DNA from: Magallana gigas
Taxonomy: Eukaryota
Reading direction: 5' to 3'
DNA length: 64,000 nt
NCBI RefSeq assembly: GCF_963853765.1
Contig: NC_088854.1
Coordinates: 33,852,001-33,916,000 of the forward strand
The position numbers and the translations under genes are program-made. The notes under the pieces were generated by a model, which worked only from the letters and a program-made list of their open reading frames with translations, was not told the origin of the DNA and did no database searches. Shown piece by piece: positions 29,731-39,499 of the stretch (positions within the stretch are counted from its first letter, which is position 1; each line of letters starts with the position of its first letter).

Positions 29731-31199
29731 ATCTTTCTTTCTTTTTTTAAATACAAATTCTTTTTACTGTGATAATTAAGGTTGCTGTGGTCATATTACT
29801 ATTTGATTTTCGTAAAAAAAAGTCAAAGAAACGCGTCGAAAGAAAGGTAGCCTAGCTACGACGAAGTAAATATTATTTTACATTCTTTCTTGGGATGACT
29901 CGATACCAAGTCAAATAACCATGCAACTGATGTTTGACATAAATGATTCCATTTAATAAACATATAAAGCTTGATGAATATATGACAATAATACTGTATC
30001 ATATCTGGTACACCAAGCACAGTGCATCGAAACTCACTTCGCCATCATTTAATCTAATCCTAATCTGGTGGAAGTTGGGGGGGGGGGGGATTAGTACCTA
30101 TATAAATCCTATTTATTATATTAATGTTGTTATTTTAACCTATTATTTCATCATGCCCCCCTCCCGATAAAAAAATGAAACCAAGGTGGGGTGGACAGGT
30201 CCTTCAAATTTAAATTTTCAATATGTAAATTTAAGAAAAATGCCCCCTCCTGCTAAATATAAAGTTCTAATGTTCAAATTTTTATAAAAATCATTATATT
30301 TATACAAAAAAACATTGTTTTTTTTTAAATTGAATTATGAAAATCTATTTTTAAATACAATTTGATTAAAATCAGATCCTCGATGCTCCCGAATAATTAA
30401 GTATTGCTTCATTGGAACACACATGTATCGTTTACAGATTGCGACAGTATCGATGGTCTGATTTTAATCAGATCATGTCTATTTCAGAACATATAACATT
30501 TATAAAAAAAAAAATTAAAAATTCAAATAATATGACTTTGGAAAAAAGGCGTTTATAATACCTATATTTGGGATTTTTTATCAAAAAGACACACATAAAA
30601 AAAAACCGTTCCTGACAGAGTCGCCACTATGTTTTCAAAGTTCGCGCGAGTCAAATGATATAGGTCCCAACACCCCTAATATACACCCAAAACGTTCTGC
30701 TTCAAATTCCTGTTAATTCTTGGCTACAGATATTTAAACTTCCCGAATCGACATCTGCTGTGGACAACATTAGACTCTTTGGATCTTTTTCAGGAATATT
30801 GCACTGGTTTTCAAACAAAGACAAAACACAACCTGGAAACACAAAGATGTAAGTTTAACCAATCTTTTTTTTTATGTTACATGTATCCTTTTACACCCCC
30901 TACATATAAAGATACTTTCGTTTTGTTTGAATATTGTTATATTGCCAAGTTTTATTTTTATCACTATTTCATTGTGTATATACTATTAGTATTTACTACC
31001 TGCAGTTTATCAATATGTTACATGTATATATGAGAACTTGCAATTTTGTTGGTAAATACACAATACTTTGAACATAAACTTGTATCGATTAATGTTATTA
31101 ATGATCGTTAAATATCATTATCATATTATATATGATCGTTTGATATTGTTATCATGTCCTCTATTTTACAGAAAATAAACATTTTTTAAAAATCCAAAC

Positions 31200-31738
31200 A
31201 TGCCTGATGACCAGAGAATTCGAAGACTACACAATGATCTCAAGGCGAGGCTGGCGATAGACTATCTCCACCCTACAGTTAATGGGGGCACTGACCGTCA
31301 AAGGTTTCTGATGAACTGTAGAGACTATCTGACAACCCCCAGAGAACAGGCCATTGAAAATGTGGTCTATGTGCTGGACATCTTCGAGAAAAAGGGAATC
31401 ATGTCTCCGGGAGAATATGGTAATTTGAAAGAAGTCGTTCGAAATTTGAACGTGGAGATCTTAGAACTGATCAGGGAAGCAGAGGACGGGATAAGACGAA
31501 TAAGGGAAGGGGACGGCGCACAAAATACCGAGAGCAGAGAGAATGCCTCATGTAAGATATCAAAGCTCGGCGATCCATACATGCAACTTATTTTTTGATT
31601 TTGATAATTTTGGTAGATTCAATAAAGTGAATTACGGTACAGAGTTTTTAAATCTTTTTTTCAGATGGTGGCTACATTTGTAACGCAAGAAACATCACAG
31701 TCAATGGGGGACACGTTACCTTTGGACCCATAGGATAA
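31200..31738 (+). CDS. 141-aa death-effector-domain-like protein with a C-terminal RHIM/cRHIM-like motif
   Basis: Coding exons 31200-31551 and 31665-31738 (phase 1, GTAAG...TTTTTTTCAG). A non-coding exon ends at 30848 (GTAAGT) and splices to an acceptor at 31171. DED-like pattern FLMNCRDYL...VLDIFEKKGIMSPGEYGNLKEVVRNLNVEILELIREAE. Tail YGGYICNARNITVNGGHVTFGPIG*. No caspase domain. Confidence 0.8.
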
Positions 31739-34700
31739 GCTCTCCGTTGATCTTGGAGTTTCAATACCCGTTTTAGCATCAAATTTTATCTTAGAGACCA
31801 CTAATAAACCTCAAAACATTTTGATGCATGTAATCATTAGATATTTTTAGAATTCTTTAAAGTTCATACATTCAAAATATTTGCGATTGTTTTACTTCAA
31901 AATATATAATTGATATTCGCAATTGATTTATTGCATTAATGCCATTTGCAAATTGTACCAAATGTCTTATTTTTCTCGCTTGGATGTGTATTTTTTGTTA
32001 GTGATAGACCACACGGTTGTGGGGATACATATTTGTGCTTGTGTATAGTTATATAGGACCCACCTCGTCATTGTTTTCGTCTGTGATTTCCTTCCCTTCC
32101 ACGTGTGTCCATCCTTTCATTAATATCTATGCGCACTTACATTTTGTAAGGAAGTAGATTCGGGACCTTGGAATACTCCAATAATGTAGTGGTCGATGGA
32201 AGTGTACCCATATAAGAGTTAACCCACTGTCTTAAAGAATGCTTTACACATGCAGTAGTTTCATTTTTCATTTTTTATTGTATTGTCAAAGTTTACTATT
32301 TTGACTGAATATATAATATTAATTGTTGTGTAACGTGTACTTTATATCTTTGTATCATGTTTTATTAAGTTTACTGACATCTATCAAATCAGTGTATATC
32401 TTTTAATTACAAAGATGTTTGCAAACAATATCATTTTGTGAAAACTTGTGTAGAAAGAGCCATGTGCTTAACTGTTTCACAACCTCCTCCGAGTTCGACT
32501 TACCAATCGTGTTTTGTTGGGTTTCTGTATACGATTAGACGATATTAATTAAAAGTGAATGTTCATTAATGATGTCATAAATAAGACGATATATGAAACT
32601 ATTATCTACAGACAATAAAGTCTAACCCTTGTCGCTTAGTAGAAATGACACTTTTCTGCATGGTTACATGTATGTGTGACTGCAAACCCCTCCTAGCGAT
32701 ACCTCCATACCATGTGCCCATCAACTGGATGGCCGCCAGGATCAAATCACAATATACACAGAAAAACGTTAATACCTAACTTTAATTACACAACATGTAG
32801 ATCGTTAAATTAATTGTCTAACCACAAGCCTTCAGACTGGCATATGGAGAAAGTACCTTTTATAAGTCGGTCTTATTCAAGTGACCTCAAAAGCCTGTGT
32901 TTACTATATACATGTAGTACCTAGTTACCAGGTGCTAATTTCTTTCAAATCTCGTTGCAGTTACTATAGTATCCAGTCACTACATAATAGCTAACTACAT
33001 GTTTACTTGCGACTAACATCCATTATACTTTATTGATTGTACACAATTTAACGAAGTTTTACAATTTATTAAAGACAAGACACTCTTAATACAGTCAAAC
33101 TTAAAATGGTTTAAAGTAAAAAGTCAAATATTGAAATAAACACTTAGAAAAGTTAATTTATGTTGAATAAGGTTTTGGCTAAAACTAGATATAATATACA
33201 TGTAAATAACAGTTATTAAGAATGTGATAAACTTCAATAGTAAACAAAATGTTTATATTTGTGCCTCTATTGGACCTTTATACAAAGCAAAATATTTAAT
33301 GAACAATCAATGAAAATTTCAAGTGATAACTAGAAGTACTTAACGAAAGGAATGAGCTACAAGTACATGTACATCACAGAGAGTCACTACAACAGCACTA
33401 AATGGGTGAGAGCTATTGCTTCAAGACGTTCCTCCACAACAAACAATTCCGGTCCTATGTATGGTGTTTTTCTCCCCGTGGTTATCTCCACTTTGATACG
33501 TACATCTTACGTGGGTTCCCCTCTGTTCCAAGGTTCCATAATATACAACCCATCGTCCTCGTGCTCCCCTATCCCCCTCTTAGCTTCCAACCATTTATTT
33601 CATCGTCTGAAATAGGTGGTGGCACGTGACTAATTATCCGGCCGCGGCGATTCCAGTAAATTATCCCCCAACTCATACTAGTACAAACAGACAGACAACG
33701 TGATCATACACACATATCTTTAAAGTCGTATCCAGCTGGCCAATATTCACTTCTTTGAGACGAGCGAGCGGGTTTGTGCGAATCTTCATGCAGGTTTTCT
33801 GGTTAGCCTACACAGAAATATACACACAGGATGTTCGTTAAAAATGCCGCATCATAATTTCTAAGAAATTTCAGTGATAATTATTGTAACAATGTAAAGG
33901 AATAAATCTTAAGCTTAAATAAAAATATTAGAATCTATCACATTAATACTTTTAGGCAACGTACCTTATTACTACATTTCTATGAAAGAGCGAAGGCCTT
34001 CAAATCCAGTGCGGAACAGGAAGGGGTTGGGCATGGGAACACATTGGAGGAAATGGCAGCGCATCTTGTACATGTGCATATACATGTATAAATATATGGA
34101 ACCTTGGAACAGGGAAAATTTCAGGTGACCCTGAGCTTTACATTAGTCATTGTGTCGATGTATAGGGGAAGCTTGGCGCCGGTGTCTGGTTTGTAGTAGA
34201 AGCCTCCACACTGGTTGCTGATGGGAGGGGCTAGACCTTGACCGACCATCATGTGACCTCCACCCCAACCTAACCTCCACCCCAGCGACATTTACATGCT
34301 GTAATCGCTATTTTTTCAATAACAAATTGGCTATTTGACGGCTGTACATGTACATACAAATTTACCATATTTATCCGAATTTATTCCATCCGTTCTTAGA
34401 TGGCAAATTGACGCACTATCGGACGAATTAAAAAATTGCTATTGTACAAAAAGTAAGAAATAGAATTTAGATACTAAATTAAAATTGTGCACAAATTATA
34501 ATTCAAATTTACGAATATAAATCAAGTTTCCTTTACAAACGTTTCTTAAAAAATAGAAGAAAGTATAATTATTTATGTGACAATCTTCTAAATTATAAAA
34601 TATATTGAATTTCAAATGGAATGTAGAATGTACTTACATGTACTTTAAAAAAAAAATTCTGTACAATACTTTTGGATTTAATTCATTGAAATTAATTTAA

Positions 34701-38269: not shown

Positions 38270-38545
38270 GGATGGAAAAGAATAGTCTTACACATACTAT
38301 GGCAAAATGATAGCGTTTAAATTGAATTGCATTCTTTTTCAAAGTGTTTGTTGGAGACGCATGACCTAATAGTCTGCATAACTGCAGAGACTTTCTGTTA
38401 ATACACAGAACAGGCCATAGGAAATGTGGCCAAGGTGCTTTTAGCAAAAATGATATTTGAGAGAAGTCGTTAGAGATTTGAACGTTGAGATCTTAGAACG
38501 AATCAGGGTATTAGAGAACGGGATAAAACAAATTAGATATTTGAG
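38270..38545 (+). pseudogene. Decayed paralog of the DED exon of the 31.2-kb gene
   Basis: Aligns by eye to 31205-31505 (AACTGCAGAGACTTTCTG / AACTGTAGAGACTATCTG; GAGAAGTCGTTAGAGATTTGAACGTTGAGATCTTAGAAC / AAGAAGTCGTTCGAAATTTGAACGTGGAGATCTTAGAAC). It has an in-frame TGA, a 2-nt deletion and a ~30-nt deletion. Confidence 0.85.
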
Positions 38546-38847
38546 ACTTGCAAATAAATAAAGAACACGCCTAATTTTGACAAGCAGTTGTCATGTCATA
38601 TTTGGGAGTTGATTTTAATCAACTCTCCTATGCAGTTACTCTGGCAAACCGAAAGTGAAACAGTGTTTGGACCTAAGCACAAATCATCACCGCTGACAAG
38701 ACTTAGTTCTTGAAAATAATAGAAAAATTCAAAGTAATGTATGCTGAAGCATTGTTTTTCAAGGAAACTTTGAAAATAGTAAGATTTTATGTAATACGCA
38801 CAACTAAGATATTTTTATAGTCTCATGTATTCCTACGCCAGAGTTTA

Positions 38848-38967
38848 ATATAGCCTCGTTCAACCAAACGCTCGGCTGTCTCCGTAAATCTCCGACAAGC
38901 AGAAAGGTTCTCTTGCTTGTCGGAGATTAACGGAGACAGCCGAGCGTCTGGTTGAACGAGACTATAT
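38848..38967. mobile_element. Palindromic MITE (~115 bp) with TA flanks
   Basis: TAGCCTCGTTCAACCAAACGCTCGGCTGTCTCCGTAAATCTCCGACAAGCA pairs with TGCTTGTCGGAGATTAACGGAGACAGCCGAGCGTCTGGTTGAACGAGACTA. Confidence 0.9.
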
Positions 38968-39254
38968 TTCGATATCAATAGTGCTTGGATCCATAAAAAT
39001 TTTTGAATTGCTTCGATTACTAATACATAGTTTGAAATCTATCTTTAAATATTACACAACATGATTCATATGGGGTTTCTCGAAATTCTTGTAGGAAAAT
39101 TCTAAAATTCATATAATAAAAAAGTGCGTAATTCAAATACAGACTAGAAACTAATTGCCATGCAAGATAAGTTTATATAAAATAAATGATAATCGATAAA
39201 ATCAACTCCCGTCACACTACCCGGTAAATTCATGATTTACAACATGGTAGTTAT

Positions 39255-39499
39255 ATGAAAACGCAAAGGAAAAGAGTGCAAGAGGGCTACAAAGTCATTA
39301 AAGGACGGACGGTCAGCAGACTCAAGAAAAGGTCTGCTGGTAAGATTTCTTTAAACTTGGTAACAAAAAGGTGGACGTACAATTTTCAAAGGTTAAAATC
39401 ATGTGCGTTTATAACTTTGCTTTAGCTTGTAGCTGCACAATAAATGCAGAAAACGTCATAGTAAACGGAGGAGCTGTGACATTTGGAAGCATAGGGTGA
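39255..39499 (+). CDS. Putative 52-aa peptide carrying only the RHIM-like motif (intact last exon of the paralog)
   Basis: Exons 39255-39339 (GTAAG donor, phase 1) and 39426-39499 (74 nt, same length and phase as 31665-31738) give MKTQRKRVQEGYKVIKGRTVSRLKKRSAACSCTINAENVIVNGGAVTFGSIG*. The start codon and expression are unproven. Confidence 0.45.

What the first reader, a model, noticed from the sequence alone, without database searches (positions are those of the whole stretch)
31200..31738. DED-only adaptor ending in a RHIM/cRHIM-like amyloid motif
Seen: a 141-aa two-exon protein consisting of a DED-like helical domain (no RxDL motif; NVEI occupies that position), a short polar linker, and a separate 74-nt exon encoding YGGYICNARNITVNGGHVTFGPIG*. 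Established: RHIMs (RIPK1/3, core I/VQI/VG) and the cryptic RHIMs of insect PGRP-LC/LE and Imd form signalling amyloids; from memory their cores are VTFG, VHIG and LHFG, preceded by N-rich beta strands. DEDs recruit FADD and caspase-8. Inference: this could be a minimal adaptor coupling an amyloid scaffold directly to a DED-caspase filament in bivalve immunity or cell death. I do not recognise this architecture from characterised proteins.
Basis: partly seen in the sequence, partly recalled or inferred. Interest (0 to 1): 0.85.

Follow-up and report, generated by a model that had tools for sequence, protein, structure and literature searches.

The report
Oyster DED protein with conserved tail
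This is a real, expressed oyster gene for a small protein made of one death-effector domain plus a short glycine/asparagine-rich tail conserved across oysters; the tail only loosely resembles the amyloid-forming RHIM motif and failed every formal test of that idea that I could run.

Summary
ATG 31200, donor after 31551, acceptor before 31665 and stop at 31736-31738 give a 141-aa protein. Both splice joints, plus an extra 5'UTR exon, appear in transcript contigs of two runs.

Residues 1-102 are a death-effector domain (DED). The model is confident and aligns to caspase-8 DED2 at Z 12.8, and the family profile hits caspase-8 DED2 at E 5.7e-9.

The 24-aa tail sits on its own exon behind a phase-1 intron. 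It aligns without gaps with tails in Crassostrea, Saccostrea and Ostrea, while the linker does not align. So it is under constraint.

The RHIM/cRHIM reading rests on pattern only.
- Pfam RHIM gives no hit at E<=10, while a canonical oyster RHIM passes.
- The tail profile does not score that RHIM and finds no RHIM chain in the PDB.
- The core glycine is alanine in 4 of 10 tails.
- The only other copy in the 564-Mb genome is a degraded tandem duplicate 8 kb downstream.
- Models leave the tail without secondary structure.

Best reading: a DED-only regulator or adaptor of FADD/DED-caspase assemblies, similar in layout to PEA-15, with a conserved second interaction motif of unknown mode. An amyloid function is possible (about 0.2) but untested.

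The parts
30745..30848 (+). Non-coding 5'UTR exon. The start is approximate: the contigs begin at 30745 (X1) and 30761 (X11).
   Evidence: Contig pieces and the joint 30848>31172, GT..AG, in two runs.
30849..31171 (+). Intron 1 (323 nt, GT..AG).
   Evidence: Joint 'skips 323' in X1 and X11.
31172..31551 (+). Exon 2: 28 nt of 5'UTR, ATG at 31200, then codons 1-117 plus the first base of codon 118.
31200..31505 (+). Death-effector domain, residues 1-102 (six helices).
   Evidence: AF2 pLDDT is above 90 for residues 1-102. VIA-align gives Z 12.8, rmsd 1.6 A over 85 residues to caspase-8 DED2, and the top 20 hits are all DEDs. The family profile hits caspase-8 DED2 at E 5.7e-9. Pfam DED for this protein alone is only E 0.03.
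31506..31551 (+). Polar linker, residues 103-117. It varies in length and sequence among orthologues.
   Evidence: Identity 0.06-0.25 with many gaps; pLDDT about 44.
31552..31664 (+). Intron 2 (113 nt, phase 1, GT..AG). Position and phase are conserved in Saccostrea echinata and in locus L013.
31665..31738 (+). Coding part of the last exon: the Gly/Asn-rich tail, residues 118-141, plus stop TAA.
   Evidence: Gapless alignment with 9 other ostreid tails.
31739..32126 (+). 3'UTR (minimum extent; the X1 contig runs to at least 32600).
   Evidence: Contig pieces, plus four polyA RNA-seq reads of X20 at 31806-32175.
38374..38537 (+). Relic of the DED exon of a tandem duplicate. The N-terminal third is missing, about 47 nt are deleted, and the frame shifts.
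   Evidence: blastn 77-84% identity in two pieces; tblastn fragments lie in different frames; sequence.
38847..38968 (.). Hairpin (MITE-like) element with 55-nt arms, 95% complementary. It lies between the relic DED and the relic tail exon.
39426..39499 (+). Tail exon of the degraded duplicate. It has the same length (74 nt), phase and acceptor position as the live one, and the stop codon falls at the same place. It encodes ...CSCTINAENVIVNGGAVTFGSIG*.
   Evidence: Tail profile 38.7 bits, E 5.6e-7; 65% nt identity to 31665-31738 without indels.

Best explanation
The locus is an expressed oyster gene encoding a 141-aa cytosolic protein with three parts: one death-effector domain, a variable polar linker, and a conserved 24-aa Gly/Asn-rich, beta-prone tail on its own exon. 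It belongs to an Ostreidae-restricted, tandemly duplicating subfamily found in Magallana/Crassostrea, Saccostrea and Ostrea. That subfamily sits within a large expansion of single-DED proteins whose named members are all oysters; the wider membership is inferred to be bivalve, because the profile library carries no species names. The most likely mechanism is inferred. The DED inserts into, or caps, the DED-DED assemblies formed by oyster FADD and DED-caspases. The protein would then tune caspase activation, as the DED-only proteins PEA-15, cFLIP-short and viral FLIPs do. The tail would be a second, short interaction module that acquires structure only on binding or self-association, and its partner is unknown. 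Shown here: the gene structure, splicing, DED fold, family membership and tail conservation. Inferred: binding to FADD/DED-caspases and any role of the tail.
For: Gene and splicing. DED: the family profile hits caspase-8 DED2 at E 5.7e-9 and cFLIP DED2 at 3e-6. The AF2 six-helix bundle has pLDDT above 90. Foldseek top hits are PEA-15, caspase-8, cFLIP and FADD DEDs. VIA-align gives Z 12.8-9.1 for 20 DED entries, against 8.8 for PYD, 8.6 for DD and 6.5 for CARD. The same profile family includes DED+caspase proteins (P0029: Peptidase_C14 1.8e-38), a DED+death-domain FADD-like protein (P0102) and a DED above the Pfam cut-off (P0021, 39.6 bits). Molluscs are known to have FADD and DED caspases (PMC11463336). 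At least 19 loci of the family lie in this genome. Tail constraint: 10 tails from Crassostrea, Saccostrea, Ostrea and a metagenome contig align without gaps. G16 is invariant and T5, I11, [VI]18 and [FI]20 are near-invariant. The linker is not alignable. The phase-1 intron before the tail is conserved. The tail has low-to-moderate pLDDT and no secondary structure in the monomer models of the oyster and Ostrea proteins. That layout, a DED followed by a flexible tail, matches PEA-15.
Against: No binding was shown. The Pfam DED score of this protein alone is far below the cut-off (15 vs 35.9 bits). The RxDL motif is absent (R-N-L-N-V). In the profile alignment the residues at the caspase-8 F122/L123 filament-patch position are M38/N39, so competence for filament formation is uncertain. 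Nothing indicates whether the protein would promote or inhibit caspase activation. Tail conservation (0.17-0.38 identity between genera) is weaker than that of the DED.
Confidence: 0.55

Rival explanations
1. The tail is a RHIM/cRHIM-type amyloid-forming motif. By co-polymerising with another amyloid motif (for instance the oyster RHIM+death-domain protein on contig 3) or with itself, it brings DEDs together and nucleates a DED-caspase filament.
For: Pattern only. Hydrophobic residues alternate (positions 2/4/6/8, 11/13, 18/20 and 28 of the tail alignment) and are separated by G/N-rich turns. There is a V-x-Phi-G/A tetrad with the same N-to-V spacing as in N-x-x-x-[IV]-Q-[IV]-G. The long forms carry N-x-x-N-x-x-I-x-Q after the tetrad. 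The tail is conserved and disordered in monomer models. Oysters do possess a canonical RHIM next to a death domain. Bivalve CARD+RHIM proteins and a C. gigas RHIM-containing protein are in the literature (PMC12452177; the reference list of bioRxiv 10.64898/2026.02.19.706818). Literature cRHIM cores are as loose as VxxG, with LHFG in fly IMD (PMC10268257).
Against: There is no Pfam RHIM hit at E<=10 for any tail, while the canonical oyster RHIM passes. The tail HMM gives the oyster RHIM no reportable score, whereas shuffles of it reach 8.1 bits. No RHIM chain appears among the PDB hits; the best hit is the thiolase NVNGG-IAIGH loop at E 2.9. The tetrad Gly is Ala in 4 of 10 tails, and Gln is never present. 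In Crassostrea only 3 residues follow the tetrad, so the strand that follows the RHIM core is missing. No other locus in 564 Mb carries the motif except the degraded tandem copy. The G-x-[VI]-x-Phi-G pattern also occurs inside the helical DED of about 45 family members, so the tetrad is not diagnostic.
Confidence: 0.2
2. The tail is a short linear docking or regulatory peptide rather than a self-assembling one. It either folds back on its own DED (auto-inhibition) or binds a globular partner by beta-strand addition, as the PEA-15 tail binds ERK2.
For: PEA-15 is among the best structural matches and has the same DED-plus-flexible-tail layout. The Ostrea orthologue's tail reaches pLDDT 63-78 without secondary structure, as expected for an extended segment with some modelled contacts. 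No second copy of the motif exists elsewhere in the genome, which fits a hetero-partner better than a homotypic code.
Against: No partner is known. The tail has no similarity to the PEA-15 tail. The G/N-rich alternating pattern is unusual for kinase-docking motifs.
Confidence: 0.15
3. The tail has no function of its own. It is a tolerated C-terminal extension of a fast-evolving, frequently duplicated and pseudogenised DED decoy gene.
For: The family turns over quickly: there is a degraded tandem copy in the window and three or more tandem copies in Saccostrea. The Crassostrea lineage lost the last 9-10 residues of the ancestral tail. Tail identity between genera is modest.
Against: The alignment is gapless and length-conserved across three oyster subfamilies and two old paralogues, next to a linker that is freely indel-prone. 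One glycine is invariant and several positions are near-invariant. The exon and intron phase are conserved.
Confidence: 0.1

Closest known systems
PEA-15 (vertebrate 130-aa DED protein)
   Same: A single DED followed by a short flexible C-terminal tail, with no enzymatic domain and a similar size. It is among the best structural matches (Foldseek rank 1; Z 11.6).
   Different: There is no sequence similarity in the tail. The PEA-15 tail is a phospho-regulated ERK-binding peptide, whereas this tail is G/N-rich with alternating hydrophobics. PEA-15 keeps the RxDL motif (from memory), and this protein does not.
Caspase-8 DED2, cFLIP-short and viral FLIPs (MC159, KSHV vFLIP)
   Same: These are the best sequence-profile and structure matches (E 5.7e-9; Z 12.8-9.1). 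Like caspase-8 DED2 (I-N-K-S-L-L in the alignment), the RxDL position is degenerate. FLIPs are DED-only regulators of DED filaments.
   Different: They have tandem DEDs, while this protein has a single DED plus a tail. The residues at the F122/L123 position are M38/N39 here.
RIPK1 C-terminus and insect IMD (RHIM or cRHIM plus a death domain), and the oyster RHIM+DD gene at G000:C3:52.44 Mb
   Same: A death-fold domain is combined with a short beta-prone motif in a disordered region.
   Different: Those carry a motif that matches Pfam RHIM (the oyster one scores 22-23.5 bits) or one shown experimentally to form amyloid, and the death-fold is a DD. This tail fails the RHIM model and is attached to a DED.
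Bivalve CARD+RHIM proteins (and iridovirus BiIV1_006R)
   Same: A bivalve death-fold domain with an annotated RHIM (PMC12452177).
   Different: They have a CARD rather than a DED, and a canonical RHIM according to that paper's annotation. I did not examine them here.

Membership tests
Death-effector domain (Pfam PF01335, death-fold superfamily) | Six-helix death fold that is closer to DEDs than to DD, CARD or PYD | tested here: met
   AF2 gives six helices with pLDDT above 90. The top 20 VIA-align entries are all DEDs (Z 12.8-9.1). PYD scores 8.8, DD 8.6 and CARD 6.5.
Death-effector domain (Pfam PF01335, death-fold superfamily) | Score at or above the Pfam gathering cut-off (35.9 bits) | tested here: not met
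   This protein scores 15 bits, E 0.03. Orthologues score 17-32.5 bits. Family member P0021 scores 39.6 bits. The family profile hits caspase-8 DED2 at E 5.7e-9, so homology holds although the single-sequence score fails.
Death-effector domain (Pfam PF01335, death-fold superfamily) | RxDL motif / charge triad at the start of helix 6 | tested here: not met
   The sequence is R81-N-L-N84-V-E-I-L. It aligns with the I-N-K-S-L-L stretch of caspase-8 DED2, which also lacks a clean RxDL.
Death-effector domain (Pfam PF01335, death-fold superfamily) | Hydrophobic 'FL' patch on helix 2 used in DED filaments | tested here: inconclusive
   By the profile alignment, the F122/L123 position of caspase-8 corresponds to M38/N39. 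One residue is hydrophobic and one is polar.
RHIM (Pfam PF12721) | Match to the RHIM model at or above 20 bits | tested here: not met
   No hit at E<=10 for the full proteins or for the isolated tails of Magallana, Saccostrea and L013. Positive control: the oyster canonical RHIM scores 22-23.5 bits.
RHIM (Pfam PF12721) | Core tetrad [IV]-Q-[IVLC]-G | tested here: not met
   The core is VTFG here, and VAFG, VAFA or ISIA in the orthologues. Gln is never present, and Gly is Ala in 4 of 10 tails.
RHIM (Pfam PF12721) | Beta-prone flanks on both sides of the tetrad | tested here: inconclusive
   The upstream flank is present. Downstream, only P-I-G follows in Crassostrea, whereas Saccostrea and Ostrea have 11-13 more residues including a conserved I-x-Q.
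RHIM (Pfam PF12721) | A partner protein carrying a cognate motif | tested here: not met
   A six-frame profile search of the whole genome finds only the gene itself and its degraded tandem copy; L011 and L012 are at chance level. The tail HMM does not score the canonical oyster RHIM. Sensitivity is limited for a 24-38-residue motif.
RHIM (Pfam PF12721) | Formation of cross-beta amyloid | not testable with these tools
   Needs ThT, EM or SDD-AGE. Monomer models show no structure in the tail.
Cryptic RHIM (insect/crustacean cRHIM, VxxG) | VxxG core whose 4th-position Gly is absolutely conserved (PMC10268257) | tested here: inconclusive
   The M. gigas tail has V-T-F-G, but the orthologous position is Ala in 4 of 10 tails. 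The pattern is so loose that it also occurs in the helical DED of about 45 family members, so meeting it carries little information.

The most novel reading that the evidence does not exclude
The ostreid tail (consensus about Y-T-F-N-x-x-N-I-x-[AV]-x-G-G-x-[VI]-x-[FI]-[GA]-N-x-G-N-x-x-I-x-Q) is a new, lineage-specific family of metazoan amyloid signalling motif, distinct in sequence from RHIM. By templated stacking it would concentrate DEDs and directly seed or cap a DED-caspase filament, joining amyloid and death-fold polymerisation in one 141-aa adaptor.
Probability: 0.15. Interest if true: 0.85.

Novelty: new variant of a known kind. Interest (0 to 1): 0.5.

Why it matters
DED-only proteins set the threshold of caspase-8-type cell death, and oysters rely on apoptosis and innate signalling against OsHV-1 and Vibrio. 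This work defines an expressed, oyster-specific DED protein subfamily, annotated only as 'uncharacterized'. It carries a conserved extra motif and belongs to an expansion of at least 19 DED loci in this genome.

If the tail proved to be a self-templating motif, it would be the first direct fusion of an amyloid-type switch to a DED. That would give a compact system for studying how the two kinds of signalling polymer are coupled. If it is a simple docking peptide, the protein is an invertebrate analogue of PEA-15. Either way the tests are cheap: peptides, ThT, and co-IP with CgFADD.

Tried and rejected
1. Complex prediction on four copies of residues 105-141 gave 'no answer' (score 0.02, controls not run). 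It is evidence neither for nor against self-association.
2. ESM Atlas look-alike search with the long Saccostrea tail gave no usable hit.
3. The search for homologous proteins restricted to the 40-residue tail region of P0011 returned only the query out of 6 candidates. It did not even return the 75%-similar S. cucullata orthologue, so the search is insensitive and uninformative.
4. The tail profile against PDB sequences gave only the thiolase loop at E 2.9. The control shows the test is weak: the canonical oyster RHIM finds RIPK3 only at E 1.7.
5. Two marginal genomic hits of the tail profile (L011, L012; E 0.18 and 1.1) match only the first half, lie in unrelated open frames, and were rejected as chance.
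6. Pfam on ten other long ORFs of the window found nothing.
7. The search of earlier findings by place and by words returned nothing.
8. LHFG (fly IMD) and VHIG (shrimp and mosquito IMD) are confirmed from PMC10268257 and PMC9531809.
9. Raw polyA RNA-seq runs X19 and X20 were sampled at about 1 in 100 and gave 0 and 4 reads. That is too few to measure expression.
10. P0002, P0003, P0005 and P0006 are 'intron-retained' forms. I consider them ORF calls on genomic contigs, not isoforms, because P0002 also reads through the upstream intron.

Full report
**Observation.**
The window sequence shows an ATG at 31200 opening a frame that runs to a GT donor at 31552. An AG acceptor at 31663-31664 is followed by 74 coding bases ending in TAA at 31736-31738. 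Translation gives 117 codons plus one base.

Contigs of two RNA-like public runs (X1 and X11, mean word depth 77 and 43) skip exactly 31552-31664 and also 30849-31171. Both gaps are GT..AG. The last exon is therefore spliced in. The gene also has an additional non-coding first exon (about 30745/30761-30848) and a 3'UTR reaching at least 32126.

A 98%-identical 141-aa protein (P0001) represents 45 sequences on 55 assembled contigs. Its cluster contains XP_052673211.1, 'uncharacterized protein LOC128155508' of Crassostrea angulata. The genome is 564 Mb in 29 contigs, and the window is G000:C2:33852001-33916000. The relatives identify it as a Magallana/Crassostrea oyster.

**The N-terminal domain is a DED.**
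On its own the protein scores only 15 bits against Pfam DED (E 0.03, cut-off 35.9). Three lines of evidence nevertheless support the assignment.
- **Relatives.** A profile search of 1.84 billion representatives found 103 relatives. Most are 100-180-aa single-domain proteins. Others are fused to a caspase domain (P0029, Peptidase_C14 1.8e-38), an AIG1 GTPase (P0044) or a death domain (P0102, FADD-like). One member exceeds the Pfam DED cut-off (P0021, 39.6 bits).
- **Sequence profile.** A profile of 84 members hits human caspase-8 DED2 at E 5.7e-9 and cFLIP DED2 at 3e-6 among PDB sequences.
- **Structure.** AlphaFold2 with that alignment gives six helices with pLDDT above 90 for residues 1-102. 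Foldseek's best PDB and Swiss-Prot matches are PEA-15, caspase-8, cFLIP, FADD DED and caspase-10. On re-alignment the top 20 entries are all DEDs (Z 12.8, rmsd 1.6 A over 85 residues for caspase-8 DED2), ahead of PYD (8.8), DD (8.6) and CARD (6.5).

The RxDL motif is indeed missing (R81-N-L-N84-V-E-I-L). In the profile alignment this stretch lies opposite I-N-K-S-L-L of caspase-8 DED2, which is equally degenerate. The caspase-8 F122/L123 position corresponds to M38/N39. Fold and family are therefore settled, but filament competence is open. This genome holds at least 19 loci of the family, several in clusters on contig 1.

**The tail is a conserved module.**
- **Where it occurs.** Orthologues with a homologous C-terminal exon exist in another Crassostrea (P0004, P0007) and in Saccostrea echinata and S. 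cucullata, each with two old paralogues (P0011/P0012 and P0111/P0112; the S. echinata pair bear consecutive NCBI locus numbers). They also exist in Ostrea edulis (P0145, XP_048775674.2) and in a metagenome contig whose gene model had missed the exon (L013, tail codons 928-1026).
- **Exon structure.** In S. echinata three or more copies lie in tandem, and the phase-1 intron sits at the same place.
- **Alignment.** Ten tails align without a single gap over 23-24 positions. G16 is invariant, and T5, I11, G15, [VI]18 and [FI]20 are near-invariant. Position 21 is G in six tails and A in four. The non-Crassostrea forms continue for 9-11 more residues with a conserved N-x-x-I-x-Q.
- **Contrast with the linker.** The linker between DED and tail varies from 15 to 38 residues and is barely alignable. 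Identity is 0.06-0.25 in the linker, 0.17-0.38 in the tail and 0.45-0.55 in the DED.
- **Pattern.** Hydrophobic residues alternate in short runs separated by G/N-rich turns. Monomer models give the tail no secondary structure (pLDDT 44-57 in the oyster, 63-78 in Ostrea).

**Is the tail a RHIM or cRHIM?**
By eye it fits the general shape. The spacing N-x-x-x-V-x-Phi-G matches N-x-x-x-[IV]-Q-[IV]-G, and the long forms have N-rich turns and a further strand. Every formal test I could run was negative or uninformative.
- Pfam RHIM gives nothing at E<=10 for whole proteins or isolated tails.
- The oyster has a canonical RHIM (S-I-H-I-H-S-S-K-N-V-Q-I-G-D-N-N-V-M-V-I, 22-23.5 bits). It lies at G000:C3:52440514, immediately upstream of a death-domain exon (PF00531, 22.7 bits). 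This is an IMD- or RIPK1-tail-like gene.
- An HMM of the ten tails gives that RHIM no reportable score, while shuffled versions of it reach 8.1 bits.
- Against all PDB sequences the tail profile finds only the thiolase N-V-N-G-G-A-I-A-I-G-H loop at E 2.9. The control is weak too, since the true oyster RHIM finds RIPK3 only at E 1.7.
- The literature defines cRHIMs merely as VxxG with an absolutely conserved Gly (PMC10268257; PMC13506858; PMC9387487). Here that Gly is Ala in four of ten tails.
- The pattern G-x-[VI]-x-Phi-G also occurs inside the helical DED of about 45 family members, so the tetrad itself has no diagnostic value.
- Six-frame searches of the whole genome with the tail, and then with the tail profile, find only the gene itself and one other place.

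**The second copy.**
That other place is in the window, at 39426-39499. It is a 74-nt exon with the same length, phase and acceptor as the live one, and its stop codon falls at the same position. It encodes ...C-S-C-T-I-N-A-E-N-V-I-V-N-G-G-A-V-T-F-G-S-I-G (38.7 bits, E 5.6e-7; 65% nt identity).

About 900 bp upstream lies a relic of the DED exon (38374-38537). It lacks the N-terminal third, carries a roughly 47-nt deletion of the L-E-x-K-G...G-x-Y core, and is frame-shifted. A 122-nt hairpin element (38847-38968) lies between the two. This is a decaying tandem duplicate, not an independent partner.

**Mechanism.**
What is shown is an expressed, spliced, DED-plus-tail protein of an oyster-specific subfamily. 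What I infer is that the DED engages the FADD/DED-caspase machinery that molluscs are known to possess (PMC11463336). The protein would then act as a small modulator or adaptor, in the way the DED-only proteins PEA-15, cFLIP-short and viral FLIPs do.

The tail is a constrained second module that is unstructured in isolation. Its mode could be self-association, docking on a partner, or folding back on the DED, and this is undetermined. I put the amyloid reading at about 0.2. The pattern and the existence of death-fold+RHIM genes in bivalves (PMC12452177; the C. gigas RHIM-containing protein cited in bioRxiv 10.64898/2026.02.19.706818) keep it alive. The failed profile tests, the G-to-A substitutions, the Crassostrea truncation right after the tetrad and the absence of any cognate motif weigh against it.

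**Novelty.**
The DED is a member of a known family. The combination of a single DED with this conserved tail is not described in the papers I could search, and the relatives are labelled 'uncharacterized' in NCBI. I rate it a new variant of a known kind (DED-only regulators). It is of moderate interest, and it would rise to high interest only if the peptide assays listed under next steps show templated assembly.

Noticed in passing
window 38374-39499: A degraded tandem duplicate of the gene: a frame-shifted, N-terminally truncated DED relic (38374-38537) and an apparently intact 74-nt tail exon (39426-39499). The tail exon is more diverged (65% nt identity) than the DED relic (77-84%).
   Followed up: partly
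window 38847-38968: A 122-nt perfect-hairpin element (55-nt arms, 95% complementary, 12-nt loop), MITE-like, inserted between the relic DED and the relic tail exon.
   Followed up: partly
G000:C3:52440514-52441546 (L003, L014, L015): The oyster's canonical RHIM (core N-V-Q-I-G-D-N-N, Pfam 22-23.5 bits) lies on an exon directly upstream of death-domain exons (PF00531, 22.7 bits). This is a RHIM+DD gene resembling insect IMD or the RIPK1 C-terminus. Its upstream exons were not worked out.
   Followed up: partly
G000, 19 places listed (clusters on C1 at 22.3-22.5, 31.8-31.95, 33.5-33.8 and 59.95-59.99 Mb): At least 19 single-exon DED-like loci of the same family in this genome, several in tandem clusters. 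This is an expansion of DED-only genes, and their C-terminal exons were not examined.
   Followed up: no
P0032 (105 aa, unnamed sequence): A distant family member whose open frame ends ...E-I-N-D-I-Q-I-G-V-S-L-S-N, so a canonical I-Q-I-G tetrad follows the DED directly. The last residues look like read-through of a GTAAGT donor, so the true C-terminus is unknown.
   Followed up: no
L016:1-1600 (Saccostrea echinata JAVQLB010000025.1): Further tandem copies upstream of LOC133192635: a tail exon at 25-108 and a B-type copy at 1027-1583 that is 76-81% identical to P0012.
   Followed up: partly
window 15255-16259 (- strand): The longest ORF of the window (334 aa) has no Pfam match at E<=0.01. It was not investigated further.
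   Followed up: no
P0044 (407 aa): A family member that fuses the DED-like domain to an AIG1/GIMAP-type GTPase (AIG1 1e-57), an unusual death-fold architecture.
   Followed up: no
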